Origin: Octopus bimaculoides
Taxonomy: Eukaryota
DNA: 64,000 nucleotides
Direction of reading: 5' to 3'
Assembly (NCBI RefSeq): GCF_001194135.2
Contig: NC_068987.1
Coordinates: 12,472,992 to 12,536,991 of the forward strand
A model generated the notes under the pieces. It saw only the letters and a list, made by a program, of their open reading frames with translations, was not told the origin of the DNA and searched no databases. A program made the position numbers and the translations under genes. Below, piece by piece: positions 23,834-63,431 of this stretch. How positions within the stretch are numbered: position 1 is the first letter of the stretch; each line of letters starts with the position of its first letter.

Positions 23834-26800
23834 ATTAGATGGAAAACTTTGAAAAGTTTATTGAATAATCTGTTAAATAAAACCTATCGGAGCATTTTTT
23901 TTTAACACAACACATTATGTCACCAAATTATTAATATGTATATAAGTAGCATACAACTCTAACTCGATATATGTCACATGACTTCCTGCTCACTTTCTTA
24001 CTTTACTAAAATAAAAATTTCCTTCTATGTATCTTTTGTATATGTACTTTATGAAATAGTAAAAGTAGTACTATAGGAAAATTCATTCTAATTTAATTAC
24101 AATAATTTAAAAAATTGTATGCAAAAGTATTCTTCAATTCTTGCAGATAGATATCTGTAAAATTAAGTAGAAAACCCAAACTACTTTTTTAACTTCAGAT
24201 TAAGAAGGATTTGTTAAAACAAAATAGTTATAAATTATTGAAATTAGTTTTTTTATATACAATTGTATTCAACTATTTGAAATATTAAAAAAAAAGACAT
24301 GAAATAATTTATTCTGTGACAGTATTATTCTTTTTCATAGTAGCATAATAAATTGAATTAACTTTCTTAATAAACTTAATATTTTTATTTTGTCCTTGCA
24401 TTTGGTTTGAATGGTTCTTGTTTTTAGATAATTTAGAACATGAAAATTTTATATTAAGATAATCATATAATATTAACTTAGTTTTCTTACTGATGATATA
24501 ATATGAACTAAATTTTCTTATTGAGAAATATTCAATTGATTTTATTAAGTAGACGATGATTGGTTATGTTATTTCTACAAACTTAACTCATTACTGTGAT
24601 GAAGCACATAAAAATAATTTTGAACCAGAAATAATAAACAAAGCAAATGACTGAAGGTGATTAAGAACAATTCTAAGTGAAAAATTAAGTTCTATGAATA
24701 ATTTATGAAAAAGTTTATTTACGAAACAAAATACAATTGTTGAAATTTAAGCAAATTTTAATAGCACAGGTCAATTCAGTATCTCTCAGAATATTAATTA
24801 AATTAATACATAAAATTGATCTAACTGATCAACAGAATCTTTTCTTAGTATTCTTAATAAGTTCATCAGTTTTTAACTGAGATACTTAAATAATTTTTTT
24901 TTTTTAATATTCATTGCAGATAAATTTCAAGGCTGAAGGAAAATTTACTAGGAAGGAGTATTGGGAAAAAAAATGAAGGTTAATGAATTACATTTAAATT
25001 TCTTCCTTCAAATAAATCAACCGAAAGAAGAAAACTTTAGTCAGTTCTCTATTATATTTATTTCTCTATATTTTTTCTTAGTTTTTTCAGCTGTACAAAC
25101 TAGAAGGCAAATTGTTATTAGAATTCACAATTTTAAAAATAAACTGATTTTATTTTTTTTTCCTTACCAGATAAAGAAATCAGAATATTTTTTTTTTTCA
25201 TACTAAAGATGAACATCTAAATAAAAAAATGCATATAAGAAATCTAATAGATTTGCTCCATTAAATCTAATCATTGAAATAAATAGATATTAGATTCAAT
25301 GTGTTGTTATATATGCATGAAGTAAGTTTTAATGTAAACTTAGTGAATTCAGGTAAAAAAAAAAAAAGAAATACTTAAAAACAAGATCTTTCTTGTTTTT
25401 CCATTTACCTTCTAGGAAGCGCACAGCCTCAGAATTGCTAAATTAATTTGCAAAAATATTTTATTTTCATTTTTTTTTTAATTGTTATTTTAGAATATAT
25501 AAATAGAATTCTTTTCCTTAACTACTAGTGTTGCCTGTACCATTCCAGACACCATTATTAGTAGCAGTATTACTACCTTTATTTTTCGCACTTTTTATAT
25601 ACTACTTCAGATATCTCAGTAGAAAACTGAGATATTTTTATTGGGACAATGATAAAGCTATTCAATCATTAATCACATTTAACAGTATTCTGATAAATTC
25701 AGTATTTATGTGTGTGTGTGTGTGTTTGTGTGTGCATGTGATATTATCTTGTAGATTTGATTTGTATTAGGATTACCTTCATTTTTAATTAAATACTAAA
25801 GGTTTGGCAAATACAAAAGAGATCTTTAAAGGATTGTCTTTTGTCCTTTTTTTTTTTTTGTTAAAAAAAAGTCAGTATTAATATTAATAAATATTGTCAG
25901 AAAATATAGACTAGTAGAGTTAGGCCAATTGAACCAACATCAAGTTGGAAAACTTAAATAATTAATTGTATTTTAAAATGACTTTTTGTTTTAAGATTTT
26001 TTGTATTTTGCATCATATAAATATATAAGAATATTTTTAGATTAAATCTCCATTTAACATACTTTTGTGTGTTGTCCTGCTGGATGAAGATGAAGAGTGA
26101 ACAGTTGTAGTTGTTCTGATTGTTCCATCCTCACTAGTAGTAGTAGTGCGGGAGGAATGTCTGCTGCTACTTTCCTCGTTGTCAAGAGAATTAAGCATAT
26201 CATCAAGATTCTTGGTACGTCTTGCAACACGGGTAATTCTGCTCTGTTTCTGCTTAGACAAATCTAAGCCTATTGGTTTTTGTTTTACATCACCTATGCG
26301 ATCTATAAGAAGAAAATAGTTTTGCAGTATTAGTATTCAATAGAATTTTTTAAATTTACATATCAGAGTTAATCATTGTTTTTGTTGGCATTCTGTCGGT
26401 TATGACATTGAGGGTTCCAATTGATCCGATCAACAGAACAGCTTGCTAGTGAAATTAACGTGCAAGTGACTGAGCACTCCACAGACACGTGTACCCTTAG
26501 CATAGTTCTCGAGGATATTCAGCGTGACACAGAGTGACAAGGCTGACCCTTTGAAATACAGGCACAACAGAAACAGGAAGAAATAGTGAGAGAAAGTTGT
26601 GGTGAAAGAGTACAGTAGGGTTCGCTGCTATCCCCTGCCGGAGCCTCGTGGAGCTCTAGGTGTTTTTGCTCTATAAACACTCACAACACCTGGTCTGGGA
26701 ATCGAAATTCCGATCCTATGACCGTGAGTCCGCTGCCCTAACCACTGGGCCATTGCACCTCCACTTTAATCATTGTAAATAGCACCTAATAGATCAGATT

Positions 26801-29159
26801 GAGCATATTTTACAAAAGAAGCAAAATGTCTGGTAGTAGCTTGCAAACTCAACAAGCTGTTCATATTAACTGGAAATTTGCTTTAGAAAAGAGATTATAA
26901 TAATTGATTCAATTATTAATAGAATAATTCAAGACCAAAGATTGCATTTAGCAGGATTTGAATTACGATTTTAACTTGTATTTGTATTCGATGTTGCATT
27001 TACTATAAATCCTCGAGTATAATCCGCACTTTTTTCCCAAAATTTAAAGGTCAAAATTTCTAGTGCATACTATATACGAGGTTAAAACTGAAATATATTT
27101 TCTAAGCAAAATTTTCTAAATGATAAATATGCGAAGGCAATTTACTTAATATTTATTTTTCACTGACGTTATTACTGTTATTTCTTTATTTTCTGCAAAC
27201 AAAGTGCACAAAAAAGCTACATGTTTGCATTATGTTATATATACAACAATAATAAAGGACGTTACCGTATATACATTTACAAACCAAGGACATTATACAG
27301 ACCTCCTTGACTCAAGTTAGAGAAGGGGTGCATATTATACACAAGGTTTAGGTTTTTCAGAAGTACAGCCCCCTAAAAATCCCCTGCGTATTATACTCAA
27401 GGGCAGACTATACTCGAGGATTTACAGTAATATAGCAATTAGTCATTCCATCTTAATTTTGCTTGTTGACCCAGAAATTAGACACAGACAAGTTTTCAAA
27501 GAGAAAAGGAAATGTATATAAATGTTTTTTTATCACAATATACAAAAACAAAATTAATTACTTTTATTATATGCAATATAACATATATAACATGATGTAC
27601 AATGTAATATATAAAGCTTGATGTATATTAATATATATATAGCTTGATGTATATTAATATATATATAGCTTGATGTATATTAATATATATATAGCTTGAT
27701 GTATATTAATGTAAAACATTAATGCTGAATGTAAAACATTAATGTCTGAATGTTTATATTCTTTGATTTTCCCATTTAACTGAACAACATTTATTCGGAT
27801 GGTAGTTCAGGGCACTCAGATTTAAGAAGCATAACCTCGGAATTTTGTCTAATGGATGAGAAGTATCTAAATAGTTATTGAAACCATCTACAACATCATC
27901 ATCATCATCATCGTTTAACATCCGTTTTCCATGCTGGCATGGGTTGGACGGTTTGACTGAGGACTGGCGAGCCAGATGACTGCACCAGGCTCCAATCTGA
28001 TCTGGCAGAGTTTCTACTGCTGGATGGCCTTCCTAATGCCAACCACTCTGAGAGTGTAGAGGGTGCTTTTACGTGCCACCAGCATGAGGGCCAGTCAGGC
28101 AGTACTGGTGACGGTCATGCTCAAATGGTGTTTTTTATGTGCCACCTGCACAGGAGCCAGTCCAGCGGCACTGGCAATGACCTCACTCGAATGTTGTTTT
28201 CCACATGCCACCGGCACAAGTGCTAGTAAGGCGACGCTGGTAATGATCACGCTCAAATAGTGCTTTTTTATGTATATATATATATAGCATATATATGCTT
28301 GCATATGTTGGACAAAGTTTATTGAGGCAGATTTTAAAATATATAACAAATATAAATAAATACTTACCTTCAACATTCACTCGGCATGAACTCTGAACCT
28401 CTCCTAGTGAGTTTTCTGCAATACATGTGTATTTACCAGCATCAGAAAGTTCAGCTGTGTGTACTTCTAATGAACAGATTCCATATGAATAAGTAACCAT
28501 ATAATGATCACCAGTCTTTATTTCTTTTCCATCTTTAAGCCATGTGACCTGCAAATAATTGTAATAATGATAATGATTATTATAACAACAATAACAACAA
28601 CAATAATAATAATAATAGAGAGTAACTGCCATTTCAGTAGTTGTAGGAGCACTTGGAACACTAACAACCAAGTTTGAGAAATATGTCAGAGAAATTGGAA
28701 CTGACATGAGGGTAAATACATGCTCAAAAAACTGTTCTATTGGAGACAGCAAGGATTTTGAGATTGGTACTTGGGTGTTCAGTATTTTCAATGATACCTG
28801 ACATCTAAGTACCGTATCTTATAATTCATAGAAACAGACCCTGTGAGACCTTTGACAGCATAATTAACTGCTTTCACAGAATTAACCGGAGCAAGTAAAA
28901 TTGAGAGCTCCGAGAAGTAAAATTTAATAAAAGTAATAATAATCCTTTCTATTATAGGCACAAAGCCTGCAATTTGGTAGGAGGAGGGCCAGTCGATTAG
29001 ATCGATTCCAGTACACAACTGGTACTTAATTTATTAGCCCTGAAAGGATGAAAGGCAAAGTCGAATTCAGCAGAACTTGAACTCAGAACTTAACGACAGG
29101 TGAGATACCACTAAGCATTTCGTCCGGAGTGCTAATGATTCTGCCAGCTCACCACCTTC

Positions 29160-32200: not shown

Positions 32201-33291
32201 AATTAACGTGCAAGTGGCTAAGCACTCCACAGACATGTGTACCCTTAACATAGTTCTTGGGGAGATTCAGCATGACACAGAGTGTGACAGGGCTGGCCCT
32301 TTGAAATACAGGTACAACAGAAACAGGAAGAAAGGGTGATAGAAAGTTGTGGCGAAAGAGTACAGCAGGGTTCGCCACAACCCCCTGCTGGAGCCTCGTG
32401 AACCTTTAGGTGTTTTTGCTCAATGAACACTCACAAGGCCTGGTCTGGGAATCGAAACCGCGATCCTATGACTGCGAGTCTGCTGCACTAACCATTGGGC
32501 CATTGTGCCACCACCACACACACACACATCTCTTTCTCTATCACTTTTGCCCCCTCTCGTTTTTCCTTCTGTTACTACTATATCTCTCTCTTTCCCTTCT
32601 CGTTCTTCCTTCTGTTACTACTATATTCCTCTCTTTCTCTCGTTGCTCACCTATTCTTCTACTTCCTCCCTTTGTTTCTCCCTCTACCACTCTCTCTTCC
32701 TTTCCCCTGCCTGGTCACATGCTTCCGATCACATGCTTCCTTTTCTTCCTTGGCTATCGCCGAGCAAACGCGCGAACTTACTTCGTCCCTCACAGCGTTC
32801 ATATACACATAATTTTTCACGTCTGGCCGCATAGCCTTTTCCGTTTGTTTTCCTATCTTGTTTTCGTTTTCGTTTGTTTTCCTGTCTTGTTTTTTGTCCG
32901 CCACTACATTCCTCCATGGCACAGGTTTAATTTGTGTATACAAATTTAATTTGCGGTCCATGGGAAGAGCCGTCTTAACGATGCGTCCTGCCCAACTCTT
33001 CGAAACGCCGGTGTTAAAACGGGGGTAGCTGATGAAGGAAAANNNNNNNNNNNNNNNNNNNNNNNNNNNNNNNNNNNNNNNNNNNNNNNNNNNNNNNNNN
33101 NNNNNNNNNNNNNNNNNNNNNNNNNNNNNNNNNNNNNNNNNNNNNNNNNNNNNNNNNNNNNNNNNNNNNNNNNNNNNNNNNNNNNNNNNNNNNNNNNNNN
33201 NNNNNNNNNNNNNNNNNNNNNNNNNNNNNNNNNNNNNNNNNNNNNNNNNNNNNNNNNNNNNNNNNNNNNNNNNNNNNNNNNNNNNNNNNNN

Positions 33292-33376: not shown

Positions 33377-36300
33377 GTGTACAATAATTTAAAATGCCAA
33401 GCTATTTATTTTTATATACTTTTGAAACTGATCACAGATGTTTAAATATTGAAGGCAAGATTTTTGTTTTCTATTAATATATGAAACAGAATTTCATTAA
33501 AGTTGCACTTACGTTCGACTTTAAGTATAGCAACTTCTTCACGGCAACCAAAAGAGTTTTCTGCTCTTACAACATATTCACCCTTGTCGTCAACTTTCAG
33601 TCTGCTGATTTTCAGTTCATATTCGTTGTTATTGTATTTCTGCATATGTTTTACACTCTGAGTGAGTATGGAATCTTCCTTTGCCCTATTAGAAAAAAAA
33701 AAAAAATTTAGATAAATTTAAATCACAATATGGGGGCATAGTAAAAGTCTGAACCCAAGATCCCATGGTTGTGAAGTGAACATCTTAACTACATAGCCAT
33801 GCCCATCGTCATCATCATCGTCGCCATCACCATCGTTGTCTTTTAATATTGGTCTTCGTTCTTGGCATGAGTTGAATGGTTCAACAGAATCTGATGAGCC
33901 AGAGGACTGGGTTATGCTCCAATGTCTGTCTTGGCATGGTTTTCTATGACTGGATTCCCTTCTTAATGCCAACCATTTTACAGAGTGTTGTGTGTACGTT
34001 TTTTGTGCTACTGGCAATATTAAGGTTGCCAGGTAACTCAATAAAAAGCACCTTTGGCAGAATGAAGTTGTAGTTGAAAAGATATCTTTATAACATGTGT
34101 TGAGAAGCTAATGCATGTTAGCCTCTCAAGTAAGTAAAATATACCCTGTTAATTTCAGATGAGAAATTTTAATTCCTTTAAAACGATTACAATATATAAT
34201 TAATTTCACATATATAATGTAGATTATAAATTATGATACATACCATGTAATAATAGGAGGTGAAACTGCAATAACTTTGCAGTCAAATTTAGCAATTTGA
34301 CCTTCACCAGCCAAAACATTACGTGGCTTACGCACAAAGCGAGGAATAGCTTCACGGCGATCTGAATAAGATACAAATGATATTTATGATTGCGTTTTTA
34401 CTATTATATTTGATTATTGGAATTTGCTTTTTGTATTCTAATCATTTTCATAGTCACTCTGATATCGTAATAAACATTGGTCTGAAACTGTTTGTAATAT
34501 ATTGTAATAGGCTCATTTACATTGATATGAAAGAAAATATTATTAGTGCATCCTAATGGATTTATAAACATTTTGTCTCTCTTTCATATATTCTAAAAGT
34601 ATGTTAGTGAATATATCTCACACACATAAAATGTTTATCAAGCTTTGTGTAACGTAGTATCTAAATAAATACAAGGGTGTTATGTAAATATTGTATTGGT
34701 TATGCAAGAACATTAATATTTGAGCAAATAGTGTACTTTATTTTCATCTTCTGCTTTTTAATATTTCTTATTTGTCTTTTTTATTAGAATAACTGGTCTT
34801 TATAGTTTAATCACATGATGGGAAAAAATATTTCATATTCTCAATAGTAAAGCTATTGCAGTGCACCTCAGCACTGTATGAATTAGGTTCGTTATTATTA
34901 TTGTTTTTTTTTATAATATTCACTATATTATATTCATCTTGGACAACCAATATGTACAATATTAGTAAAAGAAGCTGACTGAATGAAGTTCAATTAATAT
35001 ATTTCAAACTATTTCACTGAAGATTGTTCACAATACATTTCATTATTGATTTCTTGACTTATAATTTTAACTTTATAGTTGTTCAAATTTTATCTGGTAA
35101 AAATAGTTACAACTGAATTGCTTATCAAAGATTGCTGCTTTGAATTTACTAGTATTATATATTTTATTATGTGTGATTCAGTTGTACATTGATACAACTG
35201 TTTTATTGCAATGATTTTTATATAATCTAGAGATTTTTGTTAGTTTCCCGGTGTAATTTGTTAGAACTTAGATATATAATATCACTGTGTGTTAATGTGA
35301 CCACTGCGAAATTGCTGAAATCAGTAAAAAGGGTAAAAGTGCATGGAATTAAATAAGTTAGATAATTGAATTTTAATTTGATGGGACGATCCTTACCAAA
35401 GTAGGTATCGTATATCTGGTATTCCTTGGGTCTGTGTTTACGCAATGAACTGAAGTTAGCAATACGACCAATGGCGGGCATTGGTTGAGGCCAATCAGCC
35501 TAGATAAGGGGGAAAAAATATTTATTAGTTTGAGAACATTTTTATTAGGTATAAAAATAAACAGAAATGCCAATAATTTCTATTTCAGAAAAGTTTATAT
35601 AACATTTTTAGGACTAATTACAGCATTTACAAAACAGTTTGAAAATATTACAAAAGAAAGTAATATTTTGAATTGTTGTCATTAAAATATTCTGATTAAC
35701 AATAATATATTTATAATATTGAACATTAGAATGATATGTATATACATACAAGTGTAATTGTTGTTACTTTTACTCTCTAAATATTTATGAATATATACCA
35801 CTTTACACACACACACACACATTGTTGTCACTTTTACTTGTAAGACATCGATTACAAATATATACTGATTAAATATTTTATCAATAACGATTCAGATTAC
35901 TGCTGTATTACTGAAAAAGCAAAGCTACTGGCACAGGATGAGTGGAAAGAACATGAAAGAAATATTTTATTGTTTTGTTAATGATTATACTTTACAACTT
36001 TCGAAGCCTAATCGTAGAAAGCACTAATTCATCTGATGAGAAAACAAAAATTTGTTTCGATAACAAAATAACCCTATTTAGAGAAAACTAATATACAAAA
36101 GCATATATGCATATGTGATACAGAAATTGGGTTATGTTTAATATGCCCATGTATCTTTTATGCTATCAAATATGGCAATAGTTTCTTACCCTATGATTTT
36201 AAGAAAGAAAACCTTAAAATGATAGGATAAATTATAAGGAAGCATGTAGTTTTATAACTTTTTCACAACACTTTAACTGGATCATTGTGAGACTGAGTTC

Positions 36301-37028: not shown

Positions 37029-40000
37029 TAATAATAATAAATTTTACATTAATACTTACATATTTCTCTTTGATCTTCTGCCTGATTTTGTTGTATCGAC
37101 TTGATGGAATTCTGTGTGTAAGATTACTGTGATCACCCTATAACAAGATAATTGGGTAAAAAAAAAAAAACAAAAAAAAAAGAAAACAATTGAATAAATG
37201 CATCAAATTTTCTTTTCCATGGGCCAAAATTATAATTTTTGTTTTTATTATAGAACTATTTGAAATGGCATACTATTGTTTATTTCTTTATCTAGAAGCA
37301 TGATTTAGTTCTTATTTTAGACATAAAATAATTTCTTGCTGATTATCTAATTTCAATGTACTTTCATTATTCTGCTTCAAATTAAGAGCAAAGAAATTAT
37401 TTGTATCAATATCTCAATCCCATTGCTACCGTTCTTTCAGTAAGTTATGTTTGTAGTCACGATGGAACATTTCCATCTTTTGGTCATCAGTTTATTTCCT
37501 TTTCAATTAGTACATACACATATATAAGTACAAGAATTATTGATTGATTAACCCAATAAATTATTTCAATGCTGCTACACTATCCCATATATAGAAGCTC
37601 AAAATAATAGAAAAATATATTAAAAACAGTCTAAAATAAAATTACATTTCTGAAAAGGAAACAAAGCATTGTAATTATCATTTATTATTTTAAATATATA
37701 TTTTGATAAGAACAGAAACAATATATTACTTCTTAAAGGCAAATAAATATATAACTTTTTTTTTTCAAAGATAATTAATTAAAAAAAAATGATGCATCAG
37801 ATGCATCCATCTTAAGATATATATATTTTCAATAACATTAACAAAAAGAATAATAAAAAATATATAATGAAATTTGTGGAAAGTATTACAGTCTTAAGGA
37901 AAGCCAATATTTTATCATATATTTTTTTCATTATGAAACAATTTAAAATCAAATAGTCTGATTTTATTCTTTCCTTTCCTACTCTGTATAAATGTTATAA
38001 ATCAACTCAGGCATAATACTACATTCAGATATATATATAGTTTTAAGATATTTTCATAAGTAGGCTAAAGTTTTCCAATGTTCTGGAACTGGTATAAAAG
38101 AAACTCTAGATAAATCACTAGTGTGTATATATATATATATATATATGCATCCAATTGGAAATAAACATATATAATATTGAGAAACAATTATCATTATCAA
38201 TAGTCAGTAATATTCTGATTCTTTTCATTGTAACTTAATATGATGTTTGTGATGATGATGATGATGACAATATTAAAAAAGCATGATGAATTGATGGATG
38301 TCATTATGATGATGTTTATGAAAAGACACTGGTGATACGGCAGTGATGATATAATGTTCATGTTCATCATGTTAATTATAATACCACTATTCATAATAGT
38401 GTTAGAATTTTGATCAACTAAATAACAATTTTTTTTTTCTATTGGTTTTAGAAAACTGCTACATAACTAAGTTACCACTGCGGAATGACAAATATTAATG
38501 AGATTAGTAGTGACGAAGCGAACTATTGACAGGAAACATGCAGCAATTATTATTAAGTGTTCAATAATATGTGTTTTTTTTTTTTTTTCGTGACATCAGT
38601 GTGCAATCAACACAAATGATACATAACTGCTGAAACAAAATTATAATTTCAATTTATATTGTCTCTAACAAAATTTAACAATTAGCAAACAAGGGTAAAT
38701 CTATCCTTAACTGTCTAATTATATATCATTCTTTTATAGTTGTTAATGTTAGTGCCTTATTTATTTTACAAACTAATTTTATATCACTGTTTTGTTTTCA
38801 GTAGGGTTACTGTTTCATTTATATACAAACTAAGGCAGTGGTGAAATACCTACTTCAAAAATTAAGTATTGAATCATAAATTTGGTTATTACTTTATAGG
38901 AATCTTGTCGATTTCCAATGGCATAGAGATAGTGACTCTTATGGGTTAATAAGCATAATTTAAACCATAACAAAATACTGGTAAAATAAGTATTTTGTTT
39001 TACTAAGAAAACTGTAACTTATCCGTCTTCTTTTAGCTAAAGTTATACTTGCAGTATAATATTTAAAGTTTTAAATATCTATTTCAAAATAGATGTGTGT
39101 ATATATATATATAATTATGTTCAATTTATACTCAAATTTACAATATGTAAATTCATAGATTTCCCCAATCTGAAGACACTAATTAATTATAAAATTTGAA
39201 AACTCTTACATTCAATCAAATTATTTTGTCATCTATATATACCGCAAGCTTCAGTAATCAACCAGTAAAAATATTGATCTATACTGGGAATTATGATTAA
39301 CTATCATTTAAGTATAAGGTAGAGAGTAATGTTTAAACTTGGCATTTTTATTTCAATATGTGTCATCATCATTCAACATCGAGATGATTTAAGAGAAATA
39401 ACAGTTTTAGAAAGTTTCAGAGAATCTATTAAGGACTAAAATACCCAAAGAAAAATAATAATAAAAAAAAGCTATTTGTTGGACATAAAAATAATTTGTC
39501 TGGACAATGATACTAATTTATAGCATTTTGCTCTTACACACGCACAATATCTCTCTCTCTCTCTCATACACACACGCACTTGCACACATACATACAAATA
39601 CATATGCATACCTCACAGACATACATACACACAAGCACATTTACATAACTTTTCAACATGTACTTGAGAAAATTGCCATCTTAAAATAACATTGTCACCA
39701 CAATGAAATCATTAACAAATATAACTTTTATGAAATATTATGTTAAGAGTTTCTGGACAGATAAGCTCAGCTTTGAACATATAACCTTAACCCAAATAGG
39801 TATTGGATACAGAACTACTTAAATCCATTAACTTCGATCTGATTTTTTTAAAGTAATTATTACTTACAAGTCCCGAAAACCTGGTGTAAATCCCTGTGGA
39901 ATGTATCCCAGTGGAATGTATTCCTGTGGAATGTATCCTTGTGGAATGTTTCCAATTGGAATGTACCCATGTGGAATGTCGGTCGAGCCAAAGATTTTCT

Positions 40001-42241
40001 GTAGAATTGTAGTTGCTGTGGTTGTTAAGGATATATTCATCACTTTGATCACTGATCATCATCTTTGAAAAACACATTTTAAAGTATTTATAGAATGTAT
40101 AGAGATAAGGTATTATGTAAGCACTGAATGTCTTCCAAATGTGAGTGGGGTTAAGTTTATCATTTGTGGATATTAGGTTAGGTTTTTTTTTTTTTTAAGT
40201 GATCTTAATATTATGATAAATATTTACTTTACTTGAGTATCATAACAAACTAGAATTTCCAATAACTAGATTAATATCTTCATATGTATTTTTTTAAATT
40301 AAATGTTTATCAAGCATATATATAAACATATATATATATATATATANNNNNNNNNNNNNNNNNNNNNNNNNNNNNNNNNNNNNNNNNNNNNNNNNNNNNN
40401 NNNNNNNNNNNNNNNNNNNNNNNNNNNNNNNNNNNNNNNNNNNNNNNNNNNNNNNNNNNNNNNNNNNNNNNNNNNNNNNNNNNNNNNNNNNNNNNNNNNN
40501 NNNNNNNNNNNNNNNNNNNNNNNNNNNNNNNNNNNNNNNNNNNNNNNNNNNNNNNNNNNNNNNNNNNNNNNNNNNNNNNNNNNNNNNNNNNNNNNNNNNN
40601 NNNNNNNNNNNNNNNNNNNNNNNNNNNNNNNNNNNNNNNNNNNNNNNNNNNNNNNNNNNNNNNNNNNNNNNNNNNNNNNNNNNNNNNNNNNNNNNNNNNN
40701 NNNNNNNNNNNNNNNNNNNNNNNNNNNNNNNNNNNNNNNNNNNNNNNNNNNNNNNNNNNNNNNNNNNNNNNNNNNNNNNNNNNNNNNNNNNNNNNNNNNT
40801 ATATATATATGTATATATATGTATATATATATATGTATATATATATATACACAGATATCTATATATATAAAACAACAGACATATATAAATATATATCAAT
40901 TGAAACATTTATTTTTTAAGTCCTATCTTATGGCATTTCTATATCTCTGAAGTTTAACATCAAAGAATAGAAATATTTCTAACAAGAACGATGCAAGAAC
41001 TTTTAAAATATTAATTAGAAGCTATGTTTTTTCATACTCTTTCCTTTCTCTGTCTATGTACTATTCCCTTTTCTATTAATATTACATAGGGATTAATAAT
41101 GTTTAATACATCCCTAAATTATACTTGAAGCTGTATAAATACAAACCAAAATGCATAGCACCACAGCCGTCATCGAATAAGATACATTGAATAAGATGTA
41201 AAGTTATAATCCGAAAATTTGGATAACAAATATGATTTGAATATTTTCTTCCAATTTTTTTCTTATATTGTTTTTCTCTATAAAGAACAGCATTTTAAAT
41301 TTATGATACATTAAGATATAAATAAGCTTTGGATATAAATTTTAATCTCTTAGCTAAAGTACTATATTGTTTGTAACAACATTTATGAATTTCACTGGTA
41401 GATTCATCAGTGTTTTAGAGAATTTAAGAAATGCTAATAAGATTATGTATTACAATAAACATTTCAGTTACTAATATTTTAAATGAAGATCTTCATAAAG
41501 CTACGAATCATCAAAAGTAATCACACTTTTAGATTATGTTAATGAGCAGTTAGAGAAGCTTAAATTCAGTAACAATATGAAGACCTTCTTTTAAAATATT
41601 CCTTGGATTACTAAATTTGTAAGCGATTTAATCATAAATAAATGCATAAATGTATTTTTTTAAATATAATAGCTAAAGTTGTTTCTCATTAAAATAAATA
41701 TAATTTGAATTCATAAACTAAAAATATTTTAATAATTTTCATGCATAATTTGATANNNNNNNNNNATATATATATATATACACATATATTGTATAAAAGA
41801 TCGTGGGTAAGGCCAAAACAATGCGAAGCAAATGCAAGAAAACAAATATGGGAATTAATGTAGACTTATTTTGTATTCAATATTTCAGGGTTATGACCCC
41901 ATCTTCAAGAAATTGATGAATTTTGCTGATGTGCATGTGTGGAGTGGACATGAGCAGAAGGGTGTTGCTATAGCAACCAGCTAGTTTCCTGTAACACCCG
42001 TATAGCAACACCCTTCTGTGCATGTCCACTCCACACATGCTCACACACATGCACATCGGCAACATTCGTCAATTTCTTGAAAATGGAGTCATAACCCCCG
42101 AAATATTAAATACAAGGTAAGTCTACATTAATTCACATATTTGTTTACTTGGAATATACCTTGCATTTACTTTGCATTGTTTTGGCCTTACCCACAATCT
42201 TTTATACAATATATTCTACACAATGTTTCATAGTAATTATT

Positions 42242-42280
<39 letters not shown>

Positions 42281-57800: not shown

Positions 57801-60800
57801 AAGATGCATCTTTTCAACAGCTAACTTGCAGTCCAGAACCTGCATTAAAGAGCCAGATTCTTTCCCCAGAGATGTAGCTTTTCTACCACTAACTTATAAT
57901 ATTTAAAATCAAACATTAACAACACCTATCTTAACCATACAACAATTAACGAGAAAATTGAAACAGAAAGGCCCCAGTCATGGGAATCTTATTGTTTTTC
58001 TAGGATTCTTGATTAACCCCCAGTTATAAATAATAAAAGTTTTGGGGGAAAAGGGAAATACAATAAAATAGAAATACCATATACTGGATAAACTATCTAT
58101 TTTAGAATCTACAATATCTACATTTTATATGAGAATCTGCAGAATAAGATTCATTACTTAGAATACCCAGTGAGGTTTGAAATTGCCTTCACTGTCATAT
58201 ATTTTTGTCATCGTTTCTGATAATAACTAGAAAAATTTGCAATTTTTTTTAGATTTCAAATTGTCACTTATAAGAAATTTAGGAAATAAAATTAAGTAAT
58301 TCTTTTAATGGATAAAACGAAGGCTCTAAATTAAAAGAAATATATATATATTATACTGCATATTAGGTATATAAAGTATACATTTTAGAACAGTTTCTCT
58401 ATCAATTTTATATTTACAAGGAAATATTAACTACTTCTATATTGCCACCTATCTTCTCTCTATATCCTTCTCCTCTTATGCTTGTACATCAATACATTAA
58501 TTACTTTCATTATATATGAAACAGAAACATACCAGTAATGCTTAAAACAGTCATATATTTTCATCTAAATGAAATAAATAAAGTTAATAAAATACAAGTC
58601 CATTGTATAAAAATTACATTGTCTATTTATTAAAAAAAGTCAAACTTTTAAATTGTGTATCATATTATGTTAACTCTGATGTTCATATGTCCTCCATTGA
58701 TTTTATGTATGTTTTGGTCTGTCATCAGCATGCAACACACTGAATAACTGATGAACATTTTTGAGTGAATGAAACAAGCTAATAACATTAGTTGCATGTG
58801 GATGACAATGAAAATGTTTTTATGAAGTAGTTTGGCTTTCAGGTAGTGAATTTCTCATTAAAATTTTGAATAGTTCCTCATTATCTATATTAACCAAATA
58901 TTTATTTTTCATTATATACCCTCATCAATGGTTAGATATTTATATAAAAGGTTGAAACAAATTAATATCAAACAGAATTGCTTTAGTAAAACTCTTCTGC
59001 TTCTGCTAAGTCTATCCAAGCTTAATTTATTAAGCATCACTTAATTCAGTTAGTTTTTTTTATATATATATATACATCTGTATCAGAGTTGTATTTTCAT
59101 AGATCTCTGTGATCGATTACATTGTTGTCCAGTTTTAGTTCCTGCGACATTAAATAGATAAAAGATAAATTCATTTTTTGGCAGAATGTTGATCTATAAG
59201 AGCATAGGTATTGGCCTGGTTAACCAAATTAGACCCCTTAGTAGTATATACAGAGATATTACAGTATCATCAAATATCATAAACCTCACCTAATGTGGAA
59301 GGCTGTTTTTATCAATATATCTATATTAGTCAAGACAAACATACACAACTATGCCCACCACTTATGACATAGAATTACAATTCTTGTAATTTGACACTTT
59401 TTGTAGTAGTATAAATAGCTCTCTCTGATCAGTGCTGAGCAGGGAACAAACTGACCTTGACCAATGATTGTTAATTTTCTAGTGTAGTTGCTGATTATGC
59501 AGTACACTATAAGGCAGATGGACTCAGCTATTGAGAGTTATATTTTAGCTACATGTACACAGAACACTATTATTGACAGAATGTGAACTGCCAGCCTTTC
59601 AGCTCTTGATTTAGCATTTATGCTCTCAGTTTGCATTGCACCTATCTACGTCTGTGAAATGTTTTACATAACAAAATTGTTACAACTTATCAATAAAATC
59701 TATCTTCTTTCATTCTCTAACTTTATTTATACAGCTACACGTATATTTACCCAAGAATTCAGGGGAAATAGTCTTTAGATCATCAACATAGCTTGTATTA
59801 ACAAATATAAAGATATAATTTATTTGTATATAGGCATGTGGTTTATGCAGTTTAACACCCAAGAGATAGGGAGTAATGCATTAATTTATTTTCCAAGGTT
59901 TTAATGACAAAGCTGAAGTAGGGCGACTCCAAATGGGAATAAAAGTGTCATAGACATTTCTTTTTAGACCTAACTGCTACCCTAGGGTTCTTGATCCTGA
60001 TTTACAATTATAAATCATTTATGATAATATAAATGTTTTAAGAAAATAATTTGAGATTTTTAGCTCAGAGACCTTCATTACCTGAGGCCAAATTTAATTG
60101 TCTAATTATGAGACATGACATGATATTTTATTTTTTCATTATTAAACAATGAACATGCCAAGTACATAATGAAAGCATCCATACTAAATATATACGAAAT
60201 AAAATAGTTAGTATGCATTATGATATTTGAATAGGATATTACATCCTACTGCTATTATTTCACGCTGTTTATGGAACTGTCATGAAAGTTAAATATGCTT
60301 AATGGTTCAAATGTATTGAATGATTATTTTATTTCTTCACATCCATTTCGAATTTTTTCTAAAATTCAAAATAAAACTTGATCCCACTGAAAAATATCAC
60401 TATCATATAATAATTAATTCACATAAATATATAAGTATAATAAGAGTCGTATCTAAAAACGTATTTTGATGTGTTATATTGCCTTTCCAAATACTGAATG
60501 TGTCACCTACCTTCAGCCAAGCATGATCAATTGCTTCATGAACAGTTAACCTTTTCCTGAAAAAGAAACAAATGAAACCAATGAACATGTCTTAACACTC
60601 TCTTTTACTCTCTTTTACTTGTTTCAGTCATTTGACTGTGGCCATGCTGGAGCATCACCTTTAGTCGAGCAAATCGACCCCGGGACTTATTCTTTGTAAG
60701 CCTAGTACTTATTCTATTGGTCTCTTTTTGCCGAACCGCAAATGAGAGATATTTTGGTTTGATTAGCTGTTGACAGAGCAAGAAAAAACAAAGAACTATG

Positions 60801-63431
60801 CAAGTTACCTTTTCAAAGATTTCAATAATGCACTGTAGATTATTTTGTAACCTTTTGTGATTTATATCAATTTTTGTTTTTATCTTTGGACTCATTCTTC
60901 CTTGACACTCAATTATCATTTAGATAATATTTTTATGATGATACAATTACAGCAACAGTCTTTTCAATATGACACGCTCTGGATTGAATCTTTTATCTAG
61001 CATGTTAGGAAGTTAACTATTACCTAATCCATGCAGATAAACAAGGATAGGAATAAGTAAAATAACAGAATTTCAAAAGAATGAGAATACTTACGCTGGA
61101 TTTCTGAGCAAAAGTCTTTTGATGAAGTCTTTTGCCTCTGCAGAAACATTGCTAAATGCTTCTTCATCAAAGTCCCAATCACATCTTTTGACATTCTGTA
61201 GAGTCTCCAAGTCATCCTCCCCAGCAAAAGGTGATAATCCACTCAACCTGTTCATAGATAAAAAAAAAATATTTATTAGACTAAAATGTATATCACAAAT
61301 CAAAGTGATACTTTTATAATTTTAATTTCTGTTTATATAACTTCAAAAATAAATATAAACATACTTAAAATGCATTGTATAGTTAAGGAATATCCAAAGT
61401 GTAATCATAAGTACAACTTTAATCATCATCATCATCGTTTAACGTCTGCCTTCCATGATAGCATAGGTTGGACGATTTGACTTAGGACTGGCGAACCAGA
61501 AGGCTGCACCAGGCTCCAATCTGATCTGGCAGAGTTTCTACAGCTGGATGCCCTTCCTAACGCCAACCACTCCGAGAGTGTAGTGGGTGCTTTTACGTGC
61601 CAACGGCACAAAGGCCAGTCAGGCGGTACTGGCAATGGCCATGCTCAAAATGGTGTATTATACATGCCATCTGCACAGGAACCAGTCCAGTGCCACTGGC
61701 AACGACCTCACTCGAATGTTTTTTTCACGTGCCACTGGTACAAGTGCCAGTAAGGCGACGCTGGTAACGATCACACTCAAATGGTGGTGTTTATGTGCCA
61801 CTGGCATGGAAGCCAGACAGCTGCTCTGGCAATGATCACGCTCAGACGGTGCTCTTAGCGCTCCACTGGCACAGGTGCCAGTCATCGAATTTGGTTCAAT
61901 CACAATTTTAATGTTAAAGTTATTTGACTTGAAATGTTAGATTTTAACTTTGAAACCGAAAATGATTTTCCTTTTTAAACATGTATCAAAAGTGTTATTA
62001 TTATAAGTTTCACAAATTATAACTTCCATTATAATATTCTTACAAAATTTACTTACAAAACATAGGCAAGTACTCCAACTGCCCACATATCTGTGTAGAA
62101 GCCGACAGCTTCTCTATCAACAATTTCTGGAGCAGCAAACTCTGCAGTGGCTGTTGTAACTTTAACAATTTCATCAGGGTTTAATTTTGTTGCCAGACCA
62201 AAATCTATGATTTTAACTTGTGTGCTTTTCTTTGTTTCACACATGATGTTTTCTGGCTGTAATGTAGAATAAAAACAGCATTTTATTTTTAAAAGTATTA
62301 GAATACCACAATCACAAAGCATTCAATGAAAAAAAAGTCCTAAATATGAAGGGGGATTTCTTTGTGATGAGTACATTCATTCAAGCATGTCTGCTCGTAG
62401 GAATATTGGTGTTTACAGTTTCAGTTCACATGTTGCTTGCCATTTGTCTAGTAGACATCATAATCCACTTTTTAAAATAAACCCACAACAAATCATGTGC
62501 CACCTCAATGTCCACATTTGTTCTGCCCTACATTGGATAAAATTGTCACATATAAATAACCCAAGATAAAACTTTGGACATTTCCAATGAATTATCAAGT
62601 TACCAAGACCAGCTAAGGTTTGACCCCTGAACCTACAAAAATCCTCTACAAAAATTGAGCTCACATTATATAACAATATTGTGACACAACATTTTTATTT
62701 CGGCTGATCTTGTTTCATTCAATGTAATTCCAAAATAAATTGATGAAAAAAGACTCTAACGTTTAGTCAGTATCTGGACAAATTCCTCCAAGAAATACCA
62801 GACAAACTTCCGCTACCCAGATACATCTCTGTAAACAATATCTTCCAACTCAAGTGGTCTATGAAGTCACAAAACATGAGTTAAAGGACTATTGCAAATG
62901 GTGCTATTAAGTTAAAGATGACCTGGGCTTAACATGGCCAAGATCTAAGTTATCTTACTTAAAACACTATCTGTCACAACTCAATATACAATTGTATTAG
63001 TTTGCTCTTCTTTTTAACAAATAATATCTAAAAGATTTTCATTAGCATATGTTACATAGGAAATTATTATTATCACACAGCGTTTAAACAGAAAAAAATT
63101 CCTCAAAGAAATGTAAGATAAACTTTTGAAATATCTGAAAAGCGTTTCATCTAGAAAAGCGTTTTTAATAAATAATTTATAAATTATGATCTAAATATTT
63201 GATACTGAAAAATGAAAAATTTTTATATATATTTTTAGTATATACATGCTTTATTTTATTTTTTGTTATTGTTTTGTTTCTCCACTTACCTTAATATCTA
63301 AGTGGACAATGCTGTTTTCGTGCATATGTTTAAGACCTTCACAGACTTGTCGCATATAATTGATAACTTCTGCTTCAGACATCTTATAATCTTCAGCTGC
63401 AATTCTATCGAAAAGCTCTCCTCCAGAAAGA
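11347..63431 (-). CDS. unc-22: Twitchin (unc-22/projectin-like giant muscle Ser/Thr kinase), 3' portion: kinase C-lobe, autoinhibitory tail and 5 Ig domains; multi-exon, 5'-partial
   Basis: The spliced translation reads [50 protein letters not shown]...[27 protein letters not shown]...[74 protein letters not shown]. This closely matches Aplysia twitchin kinase as I recall it. All junctions are GT-AG and phase-consistent. Confidence 0.96.
11792..11943. repeat. Near-perfect 152-bp palindrome (MITE-like) in the last twitchin intron
   Basis: tgaagtatatttgccacttaaatg...ccccaggag / ctcctgggg...catttaagtggcaaatatacttca. Confidence 0.85.
12043..12284 (-). CDS. unc-22: Twitchin exon: Ig5, second half and C-terminus ([10 protein letters not shown]...DSGVYKV...QELLKSIE)
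   Basis: 242 nt; acceptor ttatttcag, donor gtaata; phase 1 to 0; not in the ORF track. Confidence 0.9.
13066..13179 (-). CDS. unc-22: Twitchin exon: Ig5, first half ([38 protein letters not shown])
   Basis: 114 nt; acceptor ttgttatttag, donor gtgagc; phase 1 to 1; not in the ORF track. Confidence 0.9.
14646..14843 (-). CDS. unc-22: Twitchin exon: Ig4, second half ([13 protein letters not shown]...[19 protein letters not shown]...LKVI)
   Basis: 198 nt; acceptor tttgatttag, donor gtaaat; phase 1 to 1. Confidence 0.94.
15843..15956 (-). CDS. unc-22: Twitchin exon: Ig4, first half ([20 protein letters not shown]...SLICEIT)
   Basis: 114 nt; poly-T acceptor ending taag, donor gtaaga; phase 1 to 1. 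Confidence 0.93.
17442..17595 (-). CDS. unc-22: Twitchin exon: Ig3, second half (IIKSNVASQ...[25 protein letters not shown])
   Basis: 154 nt; acceptor cttttatag, donor gtgagc; phase 0 to 1; frame not shown in the ORF track. Confidence 0.93.
18178..18308 (-). CDS. unc-22: Twitchin exon: Ig3, first half ([27 protein letters not shown]...WSINDR)
   Basis: 131 nt; acceptor tttcag, donor gtaaaa; phase 1 to 0. Confidence 0.93.
23760..23831. repeat. (AAT)n microsatellite
   Basis: Perfect AAT run. Confidence 0.95.
26037..26302 (-). CDS. unc-22: Alternative terminal exon of twitchin (short isoform): [17 protein letters not shown]...[15 protein letters not shown]
   Basis: Strong acceptor ttttcttcttatag in phase 1, matching the upstream exon; 87 sense codons then TAA; non-Ig, Ser/Thr-rich tail. 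Confidence 0.8.
26371..26764 (-). mobile_element. tRNA-derived SINE family D
   Basis: tRNA-like head on the minus strand (gtggaggtgcaatggcccagtggttagggcagcggactc...ttcgattcccagacc); second copy at 32132-32513. Confidence 0.85.
27001..27429. mobile_element. pogo/Tigger-like (Tc1-mariner) MITE
   Basis: Terminal inverted repeats ctataaatcctcgagtata / tatactcgaggatttacag flanked by TA; subterminal attatactc-like repeats. Confidence 0.75.
27615..27710. repeat. 26-bp minisatellite, about 4 copies
   Basis: Unit agcttgatgtatattaatatatatat. Confidence 0.9.
27895..28265 (-). mobile_element. SINE/LINE-tail family B copy
   Basis: Highly similar to 61422-61882. Confidence 0.85.
28368..28548 (-). CDS. 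unc-22: Twitchin exon: Ig2, second half ([10 protein letters not shown]...[11 protein letters not shown]...VNVE)
   Basis: 181 nt; acceptor ttgcag, donor gtaagt; phase 0 to 1. Confidence 0.95.
30014..30158 (-). CDS. unc-22: Twitchin exon: linker plus Ig2, first half ([30 protein letters not shown]...LPHPK)
   Basis: 145 nt; acceptor ttttaacag, donor gtaaat; phase 2 to 0. Confidence 0.94.
31677..31728 (-). CDS. unc-22: Twitchin exon: Ig1-Ig2 linker ([17 protein letters not shown])
   Basis: 52 nt; acceptor ttattatttcag, donor gtaatt; phase 1 to 2, which is the bridge required between the flanking exons. Confidence 0.88.
32132..32513 (-). mobile_element. tRNA-derived SINE family D copy
   Basis: Collinear with 26371-26764. 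Confidence 0.85.
33513..33685 (-). CDS. unc-22: Twitchin exon: post-kinase Ig1, second half ([10 protein letters not shown]...[11 protein letters not shown]...ILKVE)
   Basis: 173 nt; acceptor ttctaatag, donor gtaagt; phase 2 to 1; DxGxY motif. Confidence 0.95.
34244..34361 (-). CDS. unc-22: Twitchin exon: post-kinase Ig1, first half ([40 protein letters not shown])
   Basis: 118 nt; acceptor ttattcag, donor gtatgt; phase 1 to 2; I-set Ig pattern. Confidence 0.95.
35397..35499 (-). CDS. unc-22: Twitchin exon: regulatory tail ([34 protein letters not shown])
   Basis: 103 nt; acceptor ttatctag, donor gtaagg; phase 0 to 1. Confidence 0.96.
37060..37137 (-). CDS. unc-22: Twitchin exon: start of autoinhibitory C-terminal regulatory tail ([26 protein letters not shown])
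   Basis: 78 nt, not in the ORF track; acceptor cttgttatag, donor gtaagt; phase 0 to 0; matches the recalled Aplysia [26 protein letters not shown]. Confidence 0.96.
39868..40062 (-). other. Candidate alternative exon carrying a 6 x 15-bp ACATTCCA repeat array
   Basis: Consensus donor gtaagt at 39862-39867. The acceptor tgtttttcaaag gives an open 195-nt phase 0-0 exon. TGGAATGT occurs at 39897, 39912, 39927, 39942, 39957 and 39972. Confidence 0.35.
41784..42214. mobile_element. Fold-back element / MITE with arms of about 190 bp
   Basis: tattgtataaaagatcgtgggtaaggccaaaacaatgc... is mirrored by ...gcattgtttttggccttacccacaatcttttatacaata, with complementarity continuing to a short central loop. 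Confidence 0.85.
44700..45200. repeat. Compound (TA)n/(TG)n microsatellite
   Basis: Dinucleotide repeats; similar tracts at 19430-19720, 13310-13450 and 63700-63850. Confidence 0.9.
45649..46385 (+). mobile_element. SINE family A copy interrupted by an N gap
   Basis: Head gctgtgtggtgagtagcctgc...ggttcagtcccactg and body matching 1-90. Confidence 0.75.
48313..48351 (-). other. Candidate 39-nt cassette exon ([13 protein letters not shown] in phase 0)
   Basis: Acceptor tttttcactttttccag, donor aag/gtatag; symmetric and open in the phase of the host intron. Confidence 0.35.
49692..49900 (-). mobile_element. tRNA-derived SINE family C
   Basis: aaggcccgaaattttgggg...cgaaaggatgaaaggcaaagtcgac...atttgaactcagaa; copies at about 11395-11560, 13785-13905, 16481-16640, 28961-29160, 36829-36960 and 43708-43890. 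Confidence 0.85.
51000..53470 (+). mobile_element. Highly decayed non-LTR retrotransposon (CR1/L2/Jockey-like RT region)
   Basis: Broken-frame remnants resembling RT motifs in the expected order: LDI at about 52470, FL-x-x-x-TCQRVI at about 52580, YIWDGA at about 53135, GY-x-STEL at about 53255 and WNSL at about 53400. Many stops and frameshifts; boundaries approximate. Confidence 0.45.
60511..60556 (-). CDS. unc-22: Twitchin exon: end of catalytic core ([15 protein letters not shown])
   Basis: 46 nt; acceptor tttttcag, donor gtaggt; phase 2 to 0. Confidence 0.95.
61095..61247 (-). CDS. unc-22: Twitchin exon: kinase ([12 protein letters not shown]...RLLLRNP)
   Basis: 153 nt; acceptor gaacag, donor gtaagt; phase 2 to 2. 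Confidence 0.97.
61422..61882 (-). mobile_element. SINE/LINE-tail family B with (GAT)n tail
   Basis: catcatcgtttaacgtc...ggctccaatctgatctggcagagtttctacagctggatgcccttcctaa; further copies at about 1803-1936, 3317-3470, 7430-7600, 8130-8290 (+), 13455-13550, 14100-14200, 17660-17770 (+), 27895-28265 and 33805-34010. Confidence 0.85.
62057..62256 (-). CDS. unc-22: Twitchin exon: kinase catalytic loop end, DFG, APE and subdomain IX (PENIMCE...GVLAYV)
   Basis: 200 nt; acceptor acag, donor gtaagt; phase 0 to 2; DFG and AAPE intact. Confidence 0.97.
63290..63431 (-). CDS. unc-22: Twitchin exon: kinase subdomains V-VIb (LSGGELFDR...HLDIK)
   Basis: 142 nt; acceptor tttttatag, donor gtaagt; phase 2 to 0. 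Confidence 0.97.

What the first reader, a model, noticed from the sequence alone, without database searches (positions are those of the whole stretch)
37138..60510. A 23.4-kb intron sits exactly between the twitchin catalytic core and its autoinhibitory tail
Seen: this intron is 23,373 bp, whereas the other constitutive introns here are 0.5-2 kb. The only other large one (10 kb) houses the alternative last exon. It is phase 0 and splits ...HAWLK from GDHSNL.... Known: the twitchin C-terminal tail occludes the active site, and vertebrate smooth-muscle MLCK makes kinase-less telokin from an intronic promoter. Inference: the intron may host internal promoters or alternative exons. These would give a kinase-less tail+Ig protein, a tail-less (possibly de-inhibited) kinase, or a variable spacer.
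Basis: partly seen in the sequence, partly recalled or inferred. Interest (0 to 1): 0.7.

Follow-up and report, generated by a model that had tools for sequence, protein, structure and literature searches.

The report
Long intron before twitchin's inhibitory tail
The intron is real and lies one residue after the end of the twitchin kinase domain, but nothing in its sequence points to a hidden promoter or exon, so it is best read as an old domain-boundary intron that grew long in the octopus lineage.

Summary
**Observation confirmed.**
- On the minus strand, exon 60556-60511 (...HAWLK) ends at a gtaggt donor.
- Exon 37137-37060 ([26 protein letters not shown]) follows a ttatag acceptor.
- The intron is phase 0.
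- The joined exons align without a gap to Aplysia twitchin kinase (1KOB, E 7e-150).
- The Pfam kinase profile ends one residue before the junction.

**Length is approximate.**
- The 23,373 bp include 1,265 N in four gaps, each next to a (TA)n run.
- 17.4 kb is contiguous with the two flanking exons.
- The other introns here are 0.5-3.4 kb, plus one 10-kb interval that holds a stop-terminated exon.

**Interpretation neither supported nor refuted.** The intron shows:
- no Pfam domain in 46 ORFs;
- no copy of a neighbouring exon;
- no CpG island, CArG box, recursive splice site or curated RNA family;
- no excess of splice-flanked in-frame ORFs over controls.

**Verdict.** An ordinary expanded intron. 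Low interest.

The parts
60511..60556 (-). Exon E4, the last kinase-core exon (A)[15 protein letters not shown]. Its donor is AAG|gtaggt.
   Evidence: It aligns to 1KOB and 1KOA. Pfam Pkinase ends at the L of HAWLK.
37138..60510 (-). Phase-0 GT-AG intron of nominal length 23,373 bp (22,108 sequenced bases plus 1,265 N). It is AT-rich (GC 0.29) and CpG-depleted (o/e 0.25).
37060..37137 (-). Exon E5, 78 nt, phase 0 at both ends. It encodes [26 protein letters not shown], the start of the regulatory tail (the alphaR1 / S100-binding helix region, by alignment).
   Evidence: The alphaR1 assignment is inferred from PMC3114093 and the 1KOA/1KOB alignment.
35397..35499 (-). Exon E6, [34 protein letters not shown](D). 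This is the rest of the tail, the part that blocks the ATP site. Its donor is G|gtaagg.
40347..40799 (.). Assembly gap of 453 N, with (TA)n on both flanks.
41756..41765 (.). Assembly gap of 10 N, with (AT)n on the right flank.
42281..42586 (.). Assembly gap of 306 N, with (AT)n on the left flank.
45848..46343 (.). Assembly gap of 496 N, with (AT)n and TA-rich sequence on its flanks.
41784..42214 (.). Imperfect palindrome of 431 bp (arms of about 200 nt, about 90% complementary, RNA fold -256 kcal/mol). It fills most of a 515-bp contig between two gaps and looks like a foldback or MITE-like element.
   Evidence: Rfam gives only sub-threshold hairpin matches (mir-449 at 38.8 bits against a cut-off of 60.4, with no miR-34 seed).
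44682..45206 (.). Degenerate (TA)n/(TG)n microsatellite of about 0.5 kb. It is the source of all the other pseudo-miRNA Rfam matches.
43681..43863 (.). Fragment of an interspersed repeat that also occurs elsewhere in the window. A second copy is at 49679-49900, and other fragments are at 45645-45836 and 54042-54177.
   Evidence: (family D9).
39868..40077 (-). Best hypothetical alternative first exon. It is an ATG-initiated 70-codon ORF ending at a consensus gtaagt donor in phase 0. It contains a 15-nt tandem repeat (39890-39979). The total number of such candidates is within chance expectation.
   Evidence: 9 candidates against 4.3 +/- 2.9 in shuffles. No Pfam hit.

Best explanation
This is an ordinary spliceosomal intron of the octopus twitchin gene. 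It sits at an old, phase-0 position that coincides with the border between the kinase catalytic domain and the C-terminal regulatory tail.

The position is shared with a bivalve twitchin-like gene, where the intron is under 1 kb. In the octopus lineage the intron has grown to roughly 17-24 kb. The added material is AT-rich, CpG-poor non-coding DNA, TA/TG microsatellites, a foldback element and fragments of interspersed repeats.

It is removed as one unit by the E4 donor at 60510 and the E5 acceptor at 37138. No embedded exon or promoter is needed to explain it.

What is shown: the position, the phase, the colinearity of the product, the conserved position in the oyster, and the lack of detectable coding or RNA features. 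What is inferred: neutral expansion, and single-step removal.
For: **Splice sites and product**
- Splice sites and phase.
- Gap-free colinearity with 1KOB, 1KOA and 3UTO across the junction.
- Pkinase profile ends one residue before the junction.

**Conserved position**
- A Saccostrea cucullata twitchin-like gene has an intron at the same codon boundary and phase (AWLV|GDLATR...), 896 bp long. The neighbouring intron positions match as well.

**Nothing detectable inside the intron**
- 46 ORFs of at least 55 aa have no Pfam family better than E 0.025.
- tblastn with ten neighbouring exon peptides gives a best E of 0.38.
- GC is 0.29, CpG o/e is 0.25, and no 500-bp window holds more than 7 CpG.
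- No tRNA, and no Rfam family at gathering score.
- In-frame cassette candidates: 8 on the gene strand, 11 on the opposite strand, 5.9 +/- 2.8 in shuffles.
- No CArG box.
- No recursive-splice consensus on the gene strand.

**Repeats and gaps**
- Microsatellites and repeat fragments are present.
- All four gaps abut (TA)n runs.

**Genome context**
- Octopus introns are long in general, with a mean of 5.4 kb in O. minor (PMC6279123).
Against: - Within this gene segment the intron is a strong outlier. It is 7 times the next constitutive intron, while its neighbours have stayed about as short as in the oyster. Expansion was therefore local, not uniform.
- Only about 5% of the intron matches interspersed repeats elsewhere in the 64-kb window, and about 7% is simple repeat. 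Most of its sequence is of unknown origin.
- No transcript data and no cephalopod orthologue could be examined. Embedded small exons, promoters or enhancers are not excluded.
- The oyster comparator is probably a paralogue (56% identity, DFG changed to ELG), not the true twitchin orthologue.
Confidence: 0.7

Rival explanations
1. The intron houses an internal promoter or alternative exons. These would give a kinase-less tail+Ig protein (telokin-like), a tail-less kinase ending inside the intron, or a variable spacer.
For: - The intron is a size outlier at a domain boundary.
- The family has precedents. Telokin is transcribed from a promoter in intron 28 of MYLK (PMC4530952).
- A 10-kb interval downstream in this same gene does hold a stop-terminated exon (26302-26040).
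- There are 9 ATG-to-donor phase-0 candidates against 4.3 +/- 2.9 expected. One is a 70-codon ORF with a gtaagt donor at 40077-39868.
- Read-through past the E4 donor would add 35 residues and a stop, with AATAAA/ATTAAA motifs nearby.
Against: - No domain, no homologous exon, no CpG island, no CArG box, and no enrichment of in-frame cassette exons.
- The first-exon excess is about 1.6 sd, and the best candidate owes its open frame to a 15-nt tandem repeat.
- AATAAA is equally common on both strands in this AT-rich DNA: 44 against 39.
- All predicted unc-22 isoforms and all projectin isoforms keep the kinase (PMC5469603, PMC2120353).
- Database proteins that seem to start in the tail are truncated ORF calls with the kinase in frame upstream.
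- A product starting at E5 would begin with the inhibitory tail, unlike telokin.
Confidence: 0.15
2. Regulated skipping of the small symmetric exon E5. The 78-nt, phase 0-0 exon that encodes the first helix of the tail sits behind a very long intron. It could be skipped in frame (HAWLK|ADWPQP...), giving a kinase with a shortened tail.
For: - E5 is 78 nt and phase 0 at both ends.
- The oyster homologue's exon is also 78 nt.
- Exon skipping is more frequent when the flanking introns are long (statement in PMC5534336).
Against: - There is no transcript evidence of any kind.
- The E5 acceptor and donor are of ordinary strength.
- The tail is highly conserved from nematode to mollusc. That argues the full tail is needed.
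Confidence: 0.07
3. Scaffolding artefact. The intron length or content is wrong because the three short contigs between the gaps are misplaced, inverted or collapsed, or because E4 and E5 are not really neighbours.
For: - There are four gaps of estimated size.
- E4 and E5 lie on different contigs.
- A 515-bp contig is almost entirely a palindrome.
- Continuity could not be checked with reads.
Against: - Exons on both sides are in the same orientation and correct order, and give a gap-free match to Aplysia twitchin.
- 17.4 kb of the intron is contiguous with the exons regardless of the inner contigs.
- The palindrome arms differ at about 10% of positions, unlike a library fold-back artefact.
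- The gaps are the usual failures at (TA)n runs.
Confidence: 0.05

Closest known systems
Twitchin kinase region (Aplysia 1KOB; C. elegans unc-22 1KOA/3UTO): Fn-NL-kinase-CRD-Ig
   Same: - The window encodes the kinase C-lobe, a tail of about 66 residues and the following Ig domain.
- It is colinear with 1KOB (E 7e-150) and with 1KOA/3UTO (E 1e-114 to 1e-115).
- The tail motifs IPSSRY..KIR..IK.KY and [12 protein letters not shown] are kept.
   Different: Nothing differs at the protein level. The only special feature is the gene structure, a very long intron at the kinase/tail border. Two unidentified compact-genome animals have no intron at this site (L004 and L005).
Telokin/KRP promoter inside intron 28 of vertebrate MYLK
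   Same: Both involve an intron in the 3' part of an MLCK-family kinase gene, with Ig-coding exons downstream. The family is known for internal promoters (PMC4530952).
   Different: - No independent transcript, first exon or promoter element was found here.
- From my own knowledge, telokin begins after the calmodulin-binding/autoinhibitory segment. This intron lies before the whole inhibitory tail.
Saccostrea cucullata 'myosin light chain kinase, smooth muscle-like' gene (P0011, locus L001)
   Same: It has an intron at the identical codon boundary and phase (AWLV|GD...), followed by a 78-nt exon. The neighbouring intron positions are also shared.
   Different: - Its intron is 896 bp, and its neighbouring introns are about 0.15-1.3 kb.
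- The protein is only 56% identical and has ELG in place of DFG. It is probably a paralogue or pseudokinase.

Membership tests
Twitchin / titin-family autoinhibited kinase gene | Ser/Thr kinase catalytic domain of the MLCK/CAMK branch | tested here: met
   Pfam Pkinase E 1.2e-48, matched to the last profile position. The best PDB matches are twitchin 1KOB, 1KOA and 3UTO.
Twitchin / titin-family autoinhibited kinase gene | C-terminal regulatory tail of about 60 residues, directly after the kinase and before an Ig domain | tested here: met
   66 residues lie between the Pkinase end and the I-set start. They align residue for residue with the tails of 1KOB and 1KOA. The CRD is described as 60 residues in PMC8523150.
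Twitchin / titin-family autoinhibited kinase gene | Giant protein with many Ig and Fn3 domains upstream of the kinase | not testable with these tools
   The window starts inside the kinase domain, so only the downstream Ig exons are visible.
U2-type spliceosomal intron | GT donor, AG acceptor with a pyrimidine tract, and exons joining in frame | tested here: met
   gtaggt ... ttatcttgttatag, with phase 0. The product is colinear with orthologues.
Telokin-type internal promoter in an intron | Independent transcript that starts inside the intron and splices to the downstream exons | not testable with these tools
Telokin-type internal promoter in an intron | Recognisable promoter signature (CArG box / AT-rich core, or a CpG island) | tested here: not met
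   No CCW6GG in the intron. No CpG-rich window. One MEF2-like site, at chance level. The relevance of these motifs to molluscs is uncertain.
Intron with alternative or mutually exclusive coding exons | Splice-flanked open frame with similarity to neighbouring exons or to a known domain | tested here: not met
   tblastn best E 0.38. No Pfam hit. Candidate counts are at chance level.
Recursively spliced long intron | Ratchet site (Y)AG|GTRAGT on the gene strand inside the intron | tested here: not met
   The only match in the window is on the opposite strand, at 42899.
Intron hosting a non-coding RNA gene (miRNA, snoRNA, tRNA) | Match to a curated RNA family at its gathering score | tested here: not met
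   There is none in the intron. Sub-threshold miRNA matches are microsatellites or the long palindrome, and they lack a seed.

The most novel reading that the evidence does not exclude
The long intron carries an octopus-specific internal promoter or first exon, for example near 40077-39868. Its transcript would splice to E5 and make a free 'inhibitory tail plus Ig' protein. Such a protein could bind thick filaments or inhibit twitchin kinase in trans, as a molluscan counterpart of telokin that includes the autoinhibitor. Alternatively, E5 could be skipped to tune autoinhibition.
Probability: 0.1. Interest if true: 0.6.

Novelty: already known. Interest (0 to 1): 0.2.

Why it matters
If the intron only separates two exons, it is a routine piece of gene structure. 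It is one more example of an intron at a protein domain boundary, and of the local intron growth that is typical of large cephalopod genomes.

It would matter only if transcripts start or end inside it. In that case an animal with unusual muscle control would have a way to make twitchin kinase without its brake, or the brake without the kinase. That can be settled cheaply with existing octopus RNA-seq or Iso-Seq data.

Tried and rejected
1. **RNA evidence.** I therefore did not use read laying and made no attempt to get reads another way.
2. **Cephalopod orthologues.**
   - The search for homologous proteins returned no hit above 77% identity and no cephalopod protein.
   - The representative library gave only anonymous giant Ig proteins and fragments.
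   - Orthologous introns and conserved blocks could therefore not be compared.
3. **Apparent kinase-less proteins.**
   - P0009 and P0010 start at MPAIGRI. Their contigs L002 and L003 carry the kinase and the first part of the tail in frame upstream, so they are ORF-calling truncations.
   - Short hits that start at query residue 54 begin at the internal Met of R-M-TVHE.
4. **An intronic miR-34/449.** Rejected. The match is below threshold, lacks the seed, and is the centre of a 431-bp palindrome.
5. **A telokin-like promoter.** No CArG box, no CpG island, and MEF2-like sites at chance level.
6. **Recursive splicing.** No site on the gene strand.
7. **GC-richer patches with long ORFs (46.5-47.6 kb, 51.7-52.3 kb, 53.6-55 kb).**
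   - No Pfam hit.
   - There are weak matches to other places in the window, and the composition is pyrimidine-rich.
   - I read them as old repeats or compositional effects, not genes.
   - I ran no further search on them.
5. **Papers not held.** Two papers on the telokin gene structure and one on Mytilus twitchin isoforms were not in the library.
Full report
**1. What is at the coordinates**

The gene runs on the minus strand.

- Exon E4 (60556-60511) reads (A)[15 protein letters not shown] and is followed by gtaggt.
- Exon E5 (37137-37060) reads [26 protein letters not shown]. It is preceded by ...ttatcttgttatag and followed by gtaagt.
- The intron therefore spans 60510-37138.

I joined the open frames found (E1 to E7) and searched them against solved structures.

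- Aplysia twitchin kinase 1KOB matched at E 7e-150.
- C. elegans twitchin 1KOA and 3UTO matched at E 1e-114 to 1e-115.
- The alignments are gap-free across the junction: HPWLKGDHSNLTSRIPSSRY in Aplysia.
- The Pfam kinase profile is matched to its last position on the L of HAWLK, one residue before the exon end. The next Ig domain begins 67 residues later.

The tail between them corresponds to the C-terminal regulatory domain that blocks the active site (PMC8523150, PMC3114093). 'Exactly between the catalytic core and the autoinhibitory tail' is correct.

**2. The gaps**

The intron holds four runs of N, 1,265 in all.

- Each gap abuts a (TA)n or TA-rich microsatellite on at least one side. This is the usual place where short-read assemblies break.
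- All four gaps lie in non-coding sequence, so reading frame is not at stake.
- The exons on both sides have the same orientation and order, and they join without a missing residue. No constitutive exon is hidden in a gap.
- E4 and E5 sit on different contigs. The pieces contiguous with them are 14,167 bp and 3,209 bp. The intron is therefore at least 17.4 kb even if the three inner contigs (956, 515 and 3,261 bp) were misplaced.

**3. Is it unusual?**

Exon mapping gives the other introns in the window:

| Intron | Length (bp) |
|---|---|
| E1-E2 | 1033 |
| E2-E3 | 809 |
| E3-E4 | 538 |
| E4-E5 (this finding) | 23,373 |
| E5-E6 | 1560 |
| E6-E7 | 1035 |
| E7-E8 | 554 |
| E8-E9 (two gaps) | 3354 |
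| E9-E10 | 1465 |
| E10-E11 | 2065 |
| E12-E13 | 582 |
| E10-E12 (holds E11, which ends in a stop) | 10,059 |

- Within the gene the intron is a clear outlier.
- Genome-wide it is less so. A congener has a mean intron length of 5.4 kb (PMC6279123).

**4. What the intron contains**

*Composition and repeats*
- GC is 0.29 and CpG o/e is 0.25. No 500-bp window holds more than 7 CpG.
- About 1.5 kb is simple repeat, including a 0.5-kb TA/TG array at 44682-45206.
- About 1.1 kb matches interspersed repeats present elsewhere in the window.

*Coding potential*
- Forty-six ORFs of at least 55 codons on both strands gave no Pfam family better than E 0.025.
- tblastn with the ten neighbouring exon peptides gave nothing better than E 0.38. 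There is no duplicated or mutually exclusive exon.

*RNA genes*
- No tRNA, and no Rfam family at gathering score.
- The sub-threshold miRNA matches are microsatellites, apart from one at 41941-42032.
- That one is the centre of a 431-bp imperfect palindrome and lacks the miR-34/449 seed.

*Splice-flanked open frames*
- I calibrated splice-site thresholds on the real exons.
- In-frame cassette candidates number 8 on the gene strand, 11 on the opposite strand and 5.9 +/- 2.8 in shuffles.
- ATG-to-donor phase-0 candidates number 9, against 4.3 +/- 2.9 in shuffles.
- The longest is at 40077-39868. It is open because of a 15-nt tandem repeat.

*Regulatory motifs*
- No CArG box, one chance-level MEF2-like site, and no recursive-splice consensus on the gene strand.

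**5. Comparison with other animals**

The protein databases contained no cephalopod twitchin, so orthologous introns could not be compared.

- One mollusc locus was reachable, a Saccostrea cucullata gene annotated as MLCK-like (P0011, L001).
- It has introns at the same positions as the octopus gene. One lies at the same codon boundary and phase (AWLV|GDLATR...), is 896 bp long, and is followed by a 78-nt exon.
- This gene is probably a paralogue, because it is 56% identical and has ELG in place of DFG.
- It still shows that the intron position predates the bivalve-cephalopod split and that the intron is short in the oyster. The octopus intron is about 26 times longer, while its neighbours are of similar size in both animals.
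- Two genomic contigs from unidentified compact-genome animals (L004, L005) encode kinase end, tail and Ig in one exon. The intron is therefore not universal.

**6. The functional inference**

No evidence for a kinase-less or tail-less product was found.

- The two database proteins that begin in the tail (P0009, P0010) come from contigs with the kinase in frame upstream.
- Hits that begin at query residue 54 start at an internal methionine.
- The literature reports that all nine predicted unc-22 isoforms include the kinase (PMC5469603). All projectin isoforms do as well (PMC2120353).
- Telokin is indeed made from a promoter in MYLK intron 28 (PMC4530952). From my own knowledge, it starts after the regulatory segment, so the analogous octopus intron would be E6-E7 (1,035 bp), not this one.
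- These sequence tests are weak against a small first exon or a promoter without a strong signature. The idea is unsupported rather than refuted.

**7. Verdict**

- The best explanation is an ancient phase-0 domain-boundary intron that expanded locally in the octopus lineage. Confidence 0.7.
- Rival readings:

| Reading | Confidence |
|---|---|
| Internal promoter or alternative exons | 0.15 |
| In-frame skipping of the symmetric 78-nt exon E5 | 0.07 |
| Scaffolding artefact | 0.05 |

- Interest is low unless transcript data show otherwise.

Noticed in passing
window 41784-42214: A 431-bp imperfect palindrome (arms of about 200 nt, about 90% complementary, predicted RNA hairpin -256 kcal/mol). 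It fills a 515-bp contig between two gaps and lies inside the twitchin pre-mRNA. It could be a foldback or MITE-like element, and in principle a substrate for RNA editing or small-RNA production. There is no other copy in the window.
   Followed up: partly
window 26040-26302 (minus strand): Exon E11 encodes a Ser/Thr-rich segment and runs into a stop codon. Transcript-like contigs from other animals (P0009/L002, P0010/L003) also end with a Ser-rich segment and a stop right after the second Ig domain past the kinase. A short C-terminal twitchin isoform may therefore be conserved.
   Followed up: partly
window 37060-37137 and L001 39445-39522: The exon encoding the first helix of the inhibitory tail is 78 nt and phase 0 at both ends, in both octopus and oyster. 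Skipping it would stay in frame.
   Followed up: no
L001 37256-37456 (Saccostrea cucullata): The oyster twitchin-like kinase has IELGLA where the octopus and Aplysia have IDFGLA. The catalytic DFG motif is lost, so it may be a pseudokinase paralogue.
   Followed up: no
window 32250-33000 and 26400-26770: The most CpG-rich patch of the window (32501-33000: 21 CpG, o/e 1.06, GC 0.45) lies in the E8-E9 intron next to a gap. It belongs to a repeated element with a second copy near 26400-26770, and the two copies have similar translated frames. It is a repeat, not a CpG-island promoter.
   Followed up: partly
window 61435-61936, 27911-28376, 17846-18134, 13469-13714, 7421-7705, 3324-3473, 1774-1902: Many copies of one interspersed repeat sit in the short introns. 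In translation they share a frame such as ...[33 protein letters not shown].... The 23-kb intron has none of this family.
   Followed up: no
window 9218-9290 (minus strand): A marginal tRNA match (30.3 bits against a cut-off of 29), well downstream of the finding. It is probably a tRNA-derived repeat or pseudogene.
   Followed up: no
window 39790-40194 (minus strand): The longest gene-strand ORF in the intron (135 codons). It contains a 15-nt tandem repeat (39890-39979, 6 copies) that translates as repeated HSTGI. No Pfam match.
   Followed up: partly
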